From: Macrostomum lignano
Taxonomy: Eukaryota
NCBI GenBank assembly: GCA_002269645.1
Contig: NIVC01001680.1
Coordinates: 124,001 to 188,000, forward strand
Direction: 5' to 3'
DNA length: 64,000 bases
Shown: positions 47,201 to 50,200 of the stretch, piece by piece
Position numbering within the stretch: the stretch's first letter is position 1
Layout: each line of letters begins with the position of its first letter
The notes under the pieces: generated by a model
What the model saw: the letters and a program-made list of their open reading frames with translations, nothing else
What the model was told of the DNA's origin: nothing
Database searches by the model: none
Program-made: the position numbers and the translations under genes

Positions 47201-50200
47201 GCTAATTGCACTAAGTATACACTTATTAAGGCAGGCTACGGCAGACCGATTAATCAGGCTAATTGCACTAAGTATACACTTATTAAGGCAGGCTACGGCA
47301 GACCGATTAATCAGGCTAATTGCACTAAGTATACACTTATTAAGGCAGGCTACGGCAGACTTATTAGTCAGGCTAATTGCACTAAGTATACACTTATTAA
47401 GGCAGGCTACGGCAGACTAATTAGTCAGTCTAATTGCAATAAGTAGACTTATTAAGGCAGGCTAAGGCAGACTGATTAGTCAGGCTAATTGCAATAAGTA
47501 GACTTATTAAGGCAGGCTACGGCAGACTGATTAGTCAGGCTTATTGCACTAAGTAGACTTATTAAGGCAGGCTACGGCAGACTAATTAGTCAGGCTAATT
47601 GCAATAAGTAGTCTTATTAAGCAGACTGAGGCTGACAAAGCCTCTACACTGTAGTGTAGAATATTTTAATTGATATAAGGCTTACTAGCTCGTACGCAAC
47701 AGGTATAAAGTGTAATGACTTGAAAGTGAGTCTTGGAGTTTAGTTCAAGGCTCTGCCTGGGAGCGGATCCCGTGAGCAGGCAGGCAGTCAGTACAAAAGT
47801 GGAGAGACTGAGGGGGTCGTGTTTACCGTTATATTTCTGGGCTCTGGGGCCCGAACCGTATAGGCGTGCTGTGGCACGAACACAAACGTACAGGAGATAT
47901 GTAGCATGAAGCAATGGGGAGCGTGCAGTGGGGGTGACTCGGGTGAGTCAGTGAGGGGAGCAATCGGTGCTGCTTAGTCAGTGGGAGAACGCATACTGGG
48001 CCTGCTGCGGAGGGTCCGCAGCCCAGGCCAGGACATAAAGAGAGCCAATATCCAGCATCGAGCTTTGCCTAATCTTGCAACTATCAAGTTCTCATTGTTT
48101 CGTTGTGAATTTGTTGTGTTACGCACTTTGCTCTTGGGACTTTTATGTTCTTCTTAGCATCGGGGATAGCAGATACTGCTAGTATCAGAGCTTTTGCTCA
48201 CAAGTTTCATTCATATCCAAGTATTCATGGAATGGGATTTTGAGTCATATTTTAACTTATAATAGTTATAACCGAAAGTGATTGAATATTGATTCAACTT
48301 GGCAGTTATACTCAGCAACATTGAAACCCGCCACCTCAGAGCACTGGCAGAACAATTGAATTCAGCTCACTACTTGAAACAATGACGCAAGATTTCCAAC
48401 TCACGCTCAGGCGCACTGGGTCTTAGGGTGGCTGTTTTCAATTTTGCTAAGTACAAATAGGTATCGTTCCAACTGTTTATTTGATTTTCCGTGTAACGAC
48501 GAGCTTAGATTCGAAACAAAGATTCCTCATTAGAAGAAACTCTCATTAAGGTTTCTCGAAGAATCTCGCTCAACAATCATAACTTCTCCCTTTTTAATTT
48601 CTGCCCAAAACGTAAAATTTGTTTAATTTTAGTTATATAGATTTAGTAAACTTGGAAGAGGCTGAAATTTAAGAGTGCACAGTGTGACTTGGCTAATTTT
48701 TTATTATTTAGTAGCTGCTCTATTCTAAATATCGGTCAGTATAAAGTTATTGGCTCACAGACAGTAGCACAAGCGATGGCGTAATTAATTTGTCTGAGCC
48801 ATTGGTCTAGAGTTAGGCATTGAAAATATCAGACAATTTAATTATAATAGGTAAGAGCTTTATCAGTTTATGCCGTATATAGCAATTGGTGGGGGCAGCT
48901 TTGATTGCAAGGTTGGTGGTGTGATCGTGAGGGTCATTATCTTAGAGGGGGTGTGGGTACTAGACTCGGGGGGGGGGGGGGGGGTTAGACTGTCGGGCGC
49001 GCGGCTGAGAGGCCTATCTTGCCACCCTACCCCTTATCTCGATGCTGATTGGCTCGTGCAAACTGACTTTAATTATCTGGCCTGTAAGTTTCTACCCCCC
49101 CCCTACAGGCTCTGCTGAAATTCTGTTGGGTTGGAGAATTTGGGGGGTTGCAGATTAAGCTGAAATTCCACTGGCCCAACGCCTATAAATACAAAGCGTC
49201 TCAGCCAGCCTGAGACGTCACTCAAGCTACAATCAAGAAGCCTCTACATTGACTCGGCAAACCGATCGACATCTCAAATCAGCGTCAGTATGAAGTGCCT
49301 GCTCTTCCTCGCCGCTCTGATCGCCGTGGCCTACGGTGGTGGCTATGACACTGTGGAGGTCTATGACACTTACGACTACGGCTATGGTGGCTATGGCCCC
49401 GAATATGGCTACGGTGACTATGGCCCCGGCTACGGTCCCGGCTACGGTCCAGGCTACGGTCCCGGCTACGGTCCCGGCTACGGTCCCGGCTACGGTCCCA
49501 GCTACGGTCCGGGCTATGGTCCCGGCTACGGTCCCGGCTACGGCGGCTACGGCTACGGCGGCTATGGCTACGAGCCAGAATACGAGTACTACGGTCCCGG
49601 CCCCCGCGGCAAGGGCTCCTACCGCCGTTAAGCAGCCCTGCCGCAACCTGGAACGAGACTTGAAAGCGCCCGACACTTATCGGACTGTTTGTAGCATTGT
49701 TTAATGCGTGCGATAGACTTTGATTGTGTGAAGACTTGAGCAAAGTTTGTTTTTGAAATAAACCAGTTTTCTATTTAAATTAACTTACCAAACATGTTTC
49801 GACAGACTTGCTTTATTTAAAGTTAACTTTGCTACCGATAATTAAAGTTCAGAAATGAATTGTGAACATTCCATTGTGCGAACTTATGCAAACATCTCTT
49901 AAAACCAATGAACGACTCTAAATTCAGTTCCATAATCTTGAAATTTGTTCCTACAGCACCGGTTTTCATTTTGAATAGTCAACGAACTTTTATCGATTCA
50001 ATGTACCGCGGAGTCTGGGGTACATTTCTTCATTGTGACATTTAAATGTAAACTGGTTGGGTACAGCGGGACATTCTATCGTACATTCGAAACCCCCTCC
50101 CGAGGCAGCGAATTTCGCCGGCACCTTCAGCGCAAGAAGCGTATCGAGTCAAGGCCTGCGTCAGCCAAGACTGACTGGACTGACGTCTGCGACAGGCGGC

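What the first reader, a model, noticed from the sequence alone, without database searches (positions are those of the whole stretch)
49184..49762. Self-contained secreted (YGPG)n protein gene nested on the same strand inside an IQCM intron
Seen: the host exons 46637-46741 and 50109-50252 splice in phase across a complete transcription unit (TATA, signal peptide, Tyr/Gly repeats, basic C-tail, AATAAA). Established: same-strand nesting is rarer than antisense nesting and exposes the host to intronic polyadenylation. Gly/Tyr-rich secreted proteins with basic tails form quinone/DOPA cross-linked materials (trematode eggshell proteins, molluscan shematrins, cuticle proteins). Inference: a candidate eggshell, adhesive or stylet biomaterial protein expressed in a different cell type from the host.
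Basis: partly seen in the sequence, partly recalled or inferred. Interest (0 to 1): 0.7.

Follow-up and report, generated by a model that had tools for sequence, protein, structure and literature searches.

The report
Intron-nested secreted Gly/Tyr/Pro-repeat gene
A small, apparently real flatworm (Macrostomum lignano) gene for a secreted, disordered glycine/tyrosine/proline-repeat protein sits on the same strand inside an intron of an IQ-motif gene; public annotation reads it in the wrong frame and its tissue and function are unknown.

Summary
At 49184-49762 (+) there is a TATAAA, then the first ATG (49290), a 113-codon ORF and the only AATAAA in 2.5 kb (49757). The ORF encodes a signal peptide, 10 YGPx repeats, acidic blocks and a basic tail (PRGKGSYRR).

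The unit lies wholly inside a 3.4-kb GT-AG intron (46742-50108) of a same-strand IQ-motif gene. The flanking exons join in phase to complete an IQ motif. A transcript-based Macrostomum lignano protein (PAA46504.1) reads straight across that junction.

A syntenic sister copy in the public assembly has the same nested arrangement, with a separately annotated same-strand gene there. That gene is called in the +1 frame. Substitutions between the copies favour the signal-peptide frame: 8 synonymous to 1 nonsynonymous, against 0:9 in the annotated frame.

No homologue exists in any database searched; all hits are repeat-only. "IQCM" is not supported beyond the IQ motifs.

The mature protein is 97 aa, 80% Gly/Tyr/Pro, pI 4.2, and predicted disordered. 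The most likely role is a secreted, self-associating, Tyr-cross-linkable extracellular material. The tissue (egg, gland or seminal fluid) is untested, and an independent start site is inferred, not shown. It is an ordinary kind of gene, a lineage-restricted orphan, of modest interest.

The parts
46637..46741 (+). Host exon upstream of the nesting intron. It encodes IFKHPYLAPDHVRKFDSSVIEQALRERMAALKIQR and ends in phase 2.
   Evidence: Borders cag|GAT...CAGCG|gtgagt. tblastn of P0023 residues 356-391 maps here.
46742..50108 (+). Host intron (3367 nt) containing a 55-nt tandem array (46800-47621) and the nested gene.
   Evidence: No P0023 exon maps inside it. TRF finds the array. The equivalent intron in L001 is 9849-12413.
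49048..49052 (+). Inverted CCAAT box (ctgATTGGctc), a possible NF-Y site about 135 nt upstream of the TATA.
   Evidence: Read from the sequence and identical in L001. Function is inferred only.
49148..49153 (+). TTGCAG, a match to the M. lignano SL trans-splice and cis acceptor motif YTNCAG. It is relevant to the rival explanations.
   Evidence: Sequence; motif from PMC8629364. About 0.3 such matches are expected by chance in 150 nt.
49184..49191 (+). TATA box (TATAAATA), 106 nt upstream of the ATG.
   Evidence: Conserved in L001.
49197..49217 (+). Perfect palindrome CGTCTCAG-ccagc-CTGAGACG at the expected start-site region.
   Evidence: Identical in L001. Role unknown.
49290..49631 (+). CDS of 113 codons plus stop; it is the first ATG after the TATA.
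   Evidence: 8 synonymous: 1 nonsynonymous against L001; Gly codons GGC/GGT only.
49290..49337 (+). Signal peptide MKCLLFLAALIAVAYG, with predicted cleavage after G16.
   Evidence: Unique among 131 ORFs by a crude rule. It is the only helix in the AF2 model, residues 3-16.
49416..49547 (+). Eleven 12-nt units encoding D/G/S-Y-G-P (10 YGPx), the core repeat.
49602..49628 (+). Basic C-terminal tail PRGKGSYRR, which holds the only Lys and Arg of the protein.
49757..49762 (+). Poly(A) signal AATAAA, 126 nt after the stop codon, followed by GTTTTCT.
   Evidence: Conserved in L001.
50109..50252 (+). Host exon downstream of the nesting intron (EFRRHLQRKKRIESRPASAKTDW...EEKKA). It completes the IQ motif.
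   Evidence: Borders ggcag|CGAA...GCAGA|gtgagc. P0023 residues 392-439 map here.
42282..51998 (+). Whole host gene: an IQ-motif protein of about 750 aa in at least 12 exon blocks.
   Evidence: tblastn of P0023. Pfam IQ.

Best explanation
The unit is a genuine, intronless, lineage-restricted protein-coding gene of Macrostomum lignano, or a very close relative. It is nested on the sense strand in an intron of an IQ-motif gene.

Proposed expression (inferred):
- Transcription starts about 30 nt after its own TATA box, near 49215.
- It ends about 15-30 nt after AATAAA (49757), giving an mRNA of about 0.55 kb.
- Translation starts at the first AUG (49290), and the 16-residue signal peptide is removed.

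The product (shown from sequence):
- The secreted protein is 97 aa and 10 kDa.
- It is 38% Gly, 28% Tyr and 14% Pro.
- It is acidic overall, with a basic C-terminal tail.
- It is predicted to be intrinsically disordered.

Proposed mechanism (inferred from composition and from how such sequences behave elsewhere):
- The YGPG turns keep the chain hydrated and flexible.
- The 27 tyrosines drive self-association or coacervation.
- The tyrosines also offer sites for oxidative cross-linking. Tyrosinase would give DOPA-quinone links, and peroxidase would give di-tyrosine links.
- The acidic body and basic tail allow head-to-tail or partner electrostatic pairing.
- The protein would therefore be a building block or filler of a secreted extracellular material. 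The candidates are eggshell granules, a gland secretion or cement, or ejaculate.

The host pre-mRNA must read through the nested poly(A) signal, and the intron is then removed normally.

Confidence by step:
- Real coding gene in this frame: about 0.8.
- Own promoter rather than processing from host RNA: about 0.65.
- Structural or cross-linkable material role: about 0.45.

The overall figure given (0.55) is for the explanation as a whole.
For: - All signals are in the right order and spacing. The joint chance of a TATAAA and an AATAAA in suitable windows is roughly 0.002, from the window's own hexamer frequencies.
- The first ATG after the TATA opens a textbook signal peptide, unique among 131 ORFs in the window.
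- A syntenic sister locus, L001 (NIVC01004829.1), keeps the whole unit. Its CDS has the same length and its promoter and UTRs are about 98-99% identical.
- In L001 a separate + strand gene is annotated inside the host intron.
- That assembly's annotation is built from RNA-seq transcripts, poly(A)-site reads and SL reads (PMC5730564).
- Of the 9 differences between the copies, 8 are synonymous in this frame. The count is 0 of 9 in the annotated +1 frame and 1 of 9 in the third frame.
- Gly codons are all GGC or GGT: 0 of 38 are GGA or GGG, against 22% in neighbouring genes.
- The Y-G periodicity continues outside the exact DNA repeat, with different codons.
- The AF2 model shows only the signal-peptide helix. 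The rest has pLDDT below 50.
- Quinone tanning of tyrosine-rich proteins by tyrosinase is described for flatworm egg capsules (PMC5544531).
- GYGPG is otherwise known as the proline-containing motif of MaSp2 spider silk.
- Lineage-specific M. lignano genes are mostly not SL trans-spliced (PMC8629364), which favours an own promoter.
Against: - No RNA, 5'-end, 3'-end or expression data could be reached for this locus.
- The transcript evidence is second-hand. It rests on an annotated gene in the sister copy, and that annotation chose another frame.
- The two copies differ by only about 1-3% in substitutions, and neighbouring intron sequence (48100-48500) is as conserved as the gene. Conservation therefore says little.
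- Six of the 9 CDS differences are CpG transitions at TAC|GG, a mutational hot spot that happens to fall on third positions. With the one G-side CpG change, the split is 6:1, which is only weakly non-random.
- No orthologue was found outside this genome, so long-term constraint is unshown.
- Single-exon 'genes' inside same-strand introns can be assembly artefacts of pre-mRNA reads.
- The functional assignment rests on composition alone.
Confidence: 0.55

Rival explanations
1. The protein is the same, but there is no promoter of its own. The mRNA would be cut out of the host pre-mRNA by spliced-leader trans-splicing at an acceptor upstream of the ATG (for example TTGCAG at 49148-49153), plus cleavage at AATAAA. 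Host and nested gene would then be co-transcribed, an 'intronic operon'.
For: [quoted passage not shown]
- The acceptor motif is YTNCAG (PMC8629364), and a match sits 136 nt before the ATG.
- The Mlig_3_7 annotation explicitly cuts transcriptional units into genes at SL and poly(A) sites.
Against: - The YTNCAG match is expected by chance about 0.3 times in such a stretch, and it lies upstream of a canonical TATA box that would then be pointless.
- SL trans-spliced genes are mostly conserved genes, and orphans are mostly not trans-spliced.
- The SL ends in AUG, which would create an out-of-frame upstream ORF.
Confidence: 0.15
2. It is not a functional gene. A 12-nt tandem repeat in a repeat-rich intron happens to be open in five frames. 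The 'gene' annotated in the sister copy would be an artefact of intronic pre-mRNA reads or of an alternative 3' end of the host. If the 46741 donor joined 49154, the host ORF would stop after R-L-S and use the AATAAA at 49757.
For: - Fifteen per cent of this genome is simple or tandem repeat, and the window is full of repeat-borne ORFs.
- Five of six frames are open here.
- The public annotation picked a different frame.
- There are no homologues.
- The surrounding intron is equally conserved between the copies.
Against: - The TATA box, a first ATG with A at -3, a unique signal peptide and a single AATAAA occur in the correct order.
- The substitution pattern is 8:1 in this frame.
- Gly codons are NNY only, including outside the array (P = 0.013 for the 17 non-array codons).
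- Protein-level Y-G periodicity extends beyond the DNA repeat.
Confidence: 0.1
3. It is a real secreted protein, but it is not a structural material. It would be a rapidly evolving reproductive (seminal-fluid or prostate) or defence peptide that acts as a soluble factor.
For: - It is small, secreted and without homologues, with variation in the repeat. This is typical of the prostate-limited transcripts found in M. lignano screens (PMC5977470, listed) and of reproduction-related genes that evolve fast in Macrostomum (PMC7336406, listed).
- Gly/Tyr-rich secreted peptides serve in nematode defence (own knowledge: the C. elegans NLP and CNC families).
Against: - The mature protein is acidic (pI 4.2, net charge -5). 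It has no internal dibasic processing sites and no Cys, unlike cationic Gly/Tyr antimicrobial peptides.
- A content of 80% Gly/Tyr/Pro is more typical of materials than of ligands.
- Its sequence was not found in the supplementary files held for two M. lignano expression-screen papers, which is weak evidence.
Confidence: 0.15

Closest known systems
Flatworm eggshell (vitelline) precursor proteins: schistosome p14/p48 and Fasciola vitelline protein B
   Same: Both are secreted, small, Gly/Tyr-rich repeat proteins in the same phylum. Tyrosinase-driven quinone tanning of Tyr-rich proteins is the known chemistry of flatworm egg capsules (PMC5544531).
   Different: No sequence relationship was detected in any search. 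The repeat unit (YGPG, Pro-rich) differs. Macrostomum has no vitellaria, so the producing cell would differ (own knowledge). Expression and DOPA content are untested.
MaSp2 spider dragline silk repeat (GPGGY/GYGPG/GPGQQ)
   Same: It shares the same pentapeptide, GYGPG, repeated. In the paper library that motif occurs almost only in spidroin papers. From my own knowledge, it is thought to form flexible, proline-kinked, hydrated segments.
   Different: This protein is 10 kDa rather than more than 200 kDa. It has no poly-Ala blocks, no Gln, and no spidroin N- or C-terminal domains (Pfam: no hit). The resemblance is clearly convergent.
Molluscan shematrins and plant class-II glycine-rich proteins
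   Same: All have a signal peptide, Gly/Tyr repeats and a short, distinct C-terminal end. One database hit, P0119 (unnamed in the databases; a glycine-rich protein that looks plant-like to me), shares YGYGDYGPGYGGYGPGYGG.
   Different: The similarity is confined to the repeat. The shematrin tail motif (RKKKY-type, from memory) is not present, since the tail here is GSYRR. P0119 has a Cys-rich C-terminus that is absent here.
Nested (intronic) genes of metazoans
   Same: It is a small, intronless gene lying wholly inside one intron of a larger, unrelated gene. Each has its own coding sequence, and the host splices over it.
   Different: It lies on the same strand as the host, the less common orientation in flies and mammals (own knowledge). 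The organism has SL trans-splicing and operons, so co-transcription is a live alternative here.

Membership tests
Same-strand nested (intronic) gene | The entire unit lies within a single intron of the host, with no shared exon. | tested here: met
   P0023 exons map to 46635-46742 and 50110-50253 and to nothing in between. The unit spans 49184-49762.
Same-strand nested (intronic) gene | The host mRNA splices across the nested unit. | tested here: met
   The transcript-derived proteins P0022, P0023 and P0025 read ...MAALKIQR|EFRRHLQ... without interruption. The splice sites in the window are canonical and in phase. This evidence comes from the sister copy, not from the window's own RNA.
Same-strand nested (intronic) gene | An independent promoter or start site and its own 3' end. 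| tested here: inconclusive
   TATAAA (49184) and AATAAA (49757) are present and conserved, and a separate gene is annotated in L001. No 5'- or 3'-end reads were accessible.
Flatworm eggshell precursor proteins (p14, p48, vpB) | A signal peptide plus a Gly/Tyr-rich repetitive mature protein. | tested here: met
   Gly 38%, Tyr 28%.
Flatworm eggshell precursor proteins (p14, p48, vpB) | Detectable sequence homology to a known member. | tested here: not met
   There was no full-length hit of any kind among 5.8 billion clusters and 1.84 billion representatives. All hits cover residues of about 30-90 only, and those that carry a name or were read are heterogeneous and unrelated to each other. Pfam gave nothing.
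Flatworm eggshell precursor proteins (p14, p48, vpB) | Female-organ (vitellocyte or oocyte) expression and DOPA or quinone cross-linking. | not testable with these tools
   No expression or protein-chemistry data were reachable.
MaSp2-type spidroin | Conserved spidroin terminal domains and poly-Ala blocks. | tested here: not met
   Pfam found no family at E up to 10. The sequence has no Ala outside the signal peptide.
Cationic Gly/Tyr-rich antimicrobial peptides (nematode NLP/CNC type) | A cationic mature peptide, often flanked by dibasic processing sites. | tested here: not met
   pI 4.21 and net charge -5.2. The only basic residues are in the last 9 aa.
   Pfam PF00612, E = 3e-6, two stretches.
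   The database search with 417 aa of the host returned only the Macrostomum cluster. PDB gave nothing. The word-seeded search is insensitive to distant relatives, and no reference IQCM sequence was compared.

The most novel reading that the evidence does not exclude
The gene was born recently, inside the intron, from expansion of a 12-nt tandem repeat in a genome that is 15% tandem repeat. It then acquired a signal peptide, a TATA box and a poly(A) signal. It now supplies a silk-like (GYGPG) elastomeric, tyrosine-cross-linkable component of a Macrostomum secretion such as eggshell or glue. It has stayed invisible for two reasons: the public annotation uses the wrong frame, and the mature protein has no internal tryptic sites.
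Probability: 0.15. Interest if true: 0.55.

Novelty: new member of a known kind. Interest (0 to 1): 0.3.

Why it matters
Three modest points follow.

1. It corrects a public gene model. The M. lignano annotation of the sister locus encodes a 119-aa ATVPATV-type product in the +1 frame. The evidence favours a 113-aa secreted (YGPG)n protein that is absent from the protein databases searched here. It could therefore not be found by homology or proteomics searches.

2. If expression data confirm it, it gives the Macrostomum community a candidate for an unknown extracellular material. The model has RNAi, in situ hybridisation and transgenesis available. The short TATA promoter could also serve as a compact cell-type-specific driver.

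3. It is a clean case for asking how a host gene tolerates a sense-strand poly(A) signal in its intron, in an animal with SL trans-splicing and operons.

None of this overturns current understanding. Small orphan secreted low-complexity genes and nested genes are both common.

Tried and rejected
- **Homology searches.**
  - The full protein gave only weak low-complexity hits, with the word prefilter saturated.
  - A repeat-trimmed query gave nothing.
  - An exhaustive HMMER scan gave 132 hits, all repeat-only. They include an amphioxus protein named NLRC5, bacterial proteins with GYGPG-type runs, and a glycine-rich protein that looks plant-like.
  - Pfam gave none.
  - PDB gave only circumsporozoite repeats.
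- **Exact look-ups for transcripts or contigs.** Five ORFs from the window were tried: the 113-aa product, the 119-aa +1 frame, the two antisense ORFs and the ASC-like ORF. None is on record. Cluster look-ups were also empty. The window therefore comes from an assembly or copy that is not annotated in the collection.
- **Conservation as evidence of constraint: rejected.** The two copies are too close, and neighbouring intron sequence is equally conserved.
- **Mobile element or retrogene origin.** No flanking terminal repeats, target-site duplication or poly(A) tract were found.
- **Structured RNA.** No Rfam family in 40-54 kb.
- **Bacterial promoter and terminator scan.** It is irrelevant for a eukaryote, but it revealed the palindrome at 49197-49217.
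- **Literature.** No paper linking Macrostomum to Gly/Tyr-rich, eggshell or glycine-rich proteins describes this gene. Strings from the 5' part of the transcript (5' UTR and signal-peptide region) were not found in the supplementary files held for PMC6410801 and PMC4490696, and peptide strings were not found in those of PMC6410801. PMC5977470 holds no primer table.
- **IQCM identity of the host.** It could not be established.
- **Structure search.** Not attempted, because the model is low-confidence (pLDDT 50).
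Full report
**What is there**

- TATAAATA lies at 49184-49191.
- The next ATG on the + strand is at 49290, with A at -3.
- It opens a 113-codon ORF ending at 49631: MKCLLFLAALIAVAYG|GGYDTVEVYDTYDYGYGGYGPEYGYGDYGPG(YGPG)n...GYGGYGYGGYGYEPEYEYYGPGPRGKGSYRR.
- The only + strand AATAAA between 48 and 50.5 kb is at 49757-49762. It lies 126 nt after the stop codon and is followed by a T-rich stretch.
- The core is a 12-nt unit (GGCTACGGTCCC) repeated 9.9 times.
- It is flanked by degenerate Tyr-Gly periodic sequence written with other codons.

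**Is it more than chance?**

An ORF alone means nothing here. Five of the six frames are open through the repeat, and the window is packed with tandem repeats that carry long ORFs. The evidence that this frame on this strand is a gene is as follows.
- (a) The ordered TATA box, first ATG and AATAAA. From the window's own hexamer counts (15 TATAAA and 33 AATAAA per 64 kb strand), both signals falling in suitable windows has a chance of about 0.002.
- (b) The N-terminus is a canonical signal peptide. It is the only one among 131 ATG-ORFs of at least 60 aa in the window to pass a crude signal-peptide rule.
- (c) Gly is encoded only by GGC or GGT (0 of 38 GGA/GGG), against 22% GGA+GGG in the host and the neighbouring ASC-like gene. 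For the 17 codons outside the array, P = 0.013.
- (d) The comparison with a second copy, described below.

**Organism and host gene**

Joining the candidate host exons gives a continuous reading frame with two IQ motifs (Pfam PF00612, E = 3e-6).
- A database search returned a single cluster. Its members are Macrostomum lignano proteins, including PAA46504.1 / BOX15_Mlig010218g1 (P0023, 752 aa).
- P0022, P0023 and P0025 read ...RERMAALKIQR|EFRRHLQRKKRIE... across the 46741/50109 junction.
- tblastn places P0023 on the window as at least 12 exon blocks from 42282 to 51995, with none between 46742 and 50108.
- The splice borders are canonical and in phase.
The support comes from transcript-derived models of a sister copy rather than from RNA of this very copy.
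- Nothing supports the name IQCM beyond the IQ motifs.

**A second copy**

The contig encoding P0023 (L001 = NIVC01004829.1, assembly GCA_002269645.1) is collinear with window 39.3-63 kb.
- BLAST identity is about 93-97%. Most of the difference is indels, and substitutions are about 1-3%.
- This fits the known duplicated state of the DV1 genome (PMC5730564).
- The nested unit is there too, in the same intron. It has the same TATA box, palindrome, 113-codon CDS and AATAAA.
- The assembly's annotation, as held in the collection, lists a separate + strand gene inside the host gene at L001 11660-12019.
- That annotation was built from genome-guided RNA-seq assemblies whose ends were set with SL and poly(A) reads.
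- It is therefore indirect evidence for a distinct mature mRNA.

**The annotated frame appears to be wrong**

The L001 model translates the +1 frame (MTLWRSMTLTTTAMVAMAP...ATVPATVPATV, 119 aa). It starts at the second ATG, presumably because 119 aa is longer than 113 aa.
- Of the 9 nucleotide differences between the two CDS copies, 8 are synonymous and 1 is not (G to S) in the signal-peptide frame.
- The count is 0:9 in the annotated frame and 1:8 in the third frame.
- Caveat: six of the nine are C/T changes at TAC|GG CpG sites, which are mutational hot spots. Counting CpG changes on the C side against the G side gives 6:1, which is only suggestive.
- With the first-AUG rule, the signal peptide and the codon bias, frame 0 is still the best-supported reading.
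- This explains why the protein is absent from every protein set queried.

**The protein**

- After removal of 16 residues, the product is 97 aa and 10.2 kDa.
- Composition is Gly 38%, Tyr 28% and Pro 14%.
- It has no Cys, Ala, Leu and the like, and its pI is 4.2.
- It has an acidic N-terminal third, ten YGPx turns, a GYGYGG block, an acidic YEPEYEYY block and a basic end, PRGKGSYRR.
- AlphaFold (single sequence) predicts only the signal-peptide helix. The rest is unstructured, with pLDDT below 50.
- No Pfam family matches.
- The exhaustive HMMER scan found 132 proteins, all matching only the repeat. Those that carry a name or were read are heterogeneous: an amphioxus protein named NLRC5, bacterial proteins with GYGPG-type runs, a glycine-rich protein that looks plant-like, and metagenomic ORFs.
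- In the literature, GYGPG is essentially a MaSp2 spider-silk motif.
- The resemblance to any known material protein is therefore convergent, not homologous.

**How it most likely works**

- Shown: the gene anatomy, the nesting, the host splice, and the secretory and disordered nature of the product as read from the sequence.
- Inferred: transcription from its own TATA promoter, starting near 49215.
- Inferred: read-through of the nested poly(A) signal by the host polymerase.
- Inferred: a role as a self-associating, tyrosine-cross-linkable component of a secretion.
- The last inference rests on composition. From my own recollection of the elastomer literature, proteins with this much Pro and Gly stay hydrated and disordered rather than forming amyloid.
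- Dense Tyr promotes coacervation and provides substrates for tyrosinase or peroxidase.
- Flatworm egg capsules are known to be tanned this way (PMC5544531).
- Which secretion is involved is unknown. From my own recollection of the ultrastructural literature, the stylet is formed intracellularly, whereas this protein enters the secretory pathway.

**Rivals**

1. SL trans-splicing out of the host pre-mRNA.
   - A TTGCAG at 49148-49153 matches the published acceptor motif.
   - It is a chance-level match, and it lies upstream of the TATA box.
   - Orphan genes are mostly not trans-spliced.
2. No functional gene.
   - It would be a repeat-borne ORF plus an annotation artefact, or an alternative host 3' end.
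   - Splicing 46741 to 49154 would end the host ORF after R-L-S.
3. A soluble reproductive or defence factor rather than a material.
   - The acidic pI and the lack of processing sites argue against the antimicrobial form of this idea.

**Comparison and novelty**

Functionally it belongs with the many secreted Gly/Tyr-rich repeat proteins of invertebrate materials. Structurally it is an ordinary nested gene in the less common sense orientation. It is not a member of any defined family, as the membership table shows. It is a lineage-restricted orphan, mis-framed in the public annotation. I rate it a new member of a known kind, with interest 0.3.

**Limits**

No RNA-level or expression data could be reached. 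Only two closely related copies were available. Orthologues in other Macrostomum species could not be searched. The decisive checks are listed separately.

Noticed in passing
L001 11660-12019 (sister copy), equivalent to window 49345-49704: The public M. lignano annotation calls the nested gene in the +1 frame (119 aa, ATVPATV repeats) rather than in the signal-peptide frame (113 aa). The likely reason is a longest-ORF rule. The frame-0 protein is absent from all protein collections searched.
   Followed up: yes
window 49197-49217: A perfect 8-bp-stem palindrome, CGTCTCAG-ccagc-CTGAGACG, lies 5 nt after the TATA box, at the expected start site. It is identical in the sister copy. It could be a factor-binding site or a hairpin at the 5' end of the mRNA.
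   Followed up: partly
window 49148-49153: TTGCAG matches the M. lignano trans- and cis-splice acceptor motif YTNCAG. If the host donor at 46741 used it, the host ORF would end after three codons (R-L-S-stop) and could use the nested AATAAA. That would give a truncated host isoform lacking both IQ motifs.
   Followed up: partly
window 49338-49628 (mature protein): All Lys and Arg lie in the last 9 residues, so trypsin would leave one peptide of about 89 aa. Together with the mis-framed annotation, this would make the protein invisible to routine shotgun proteomics.
   Followed up: no
window 50640-50708: There is an extra 23-codon host exon (TSEHAAKLESKLEVIGPHVEVYQ) between the exons at 50109-50252 and 50975-51249, found through P0022 and P0023. 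Skipping it also keeps the frame, so it could be a cassette exon. A perfect 35-nt x 5.3 tandem array (50280-50466) lies just upstream of it.
   Followed up: partly
window 57402-59153 (+): An intronless 584-aa ORF encodes an amiloride-sensitive sodium channel (ASC/DEG/ENaC) family protein (Pfam PF00858, E = 3e-31). It is conserved at about 97% in the sister locus.
   Followed up: partly
window about 53100-56900 (-), by synteny with L001 15405-18068: A tetraspanin gene (279 aa in L001, PF00335) should lie here on the minus strand. The region also carries long proline- and cysteine-rich repeat ORFs (54545-56132) made of short tandem units.
   Followed up: no
window 1352-4688; 17231-18467; 19515-23289; 27556-28672; 36787-37925; 52844-53361: The tandem-repeat load is very high. 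It includes a 53-nt satellite x 63, (TGTC)309, (ACTA)944 spanning 3.8 kb (GC 27%, GC skew -0.9), (CTGT)281, (TCTA)285 and a perfect (TGCC)129. Many of the long ORFs in the window are artefacts of these arrays.
   Followed up: partly
window 47700-48035 and 46800-47621 versus L001: The nesting intron differs between the two copies mainly by indels. The window has about 330 nt that are absent from L001 and a longer 55-nt tandem array (14.8 copies). The 1.1 kb upstream of the nested gene (48100-48500 and onwards) is about 99% identical.
   Followed up: partly
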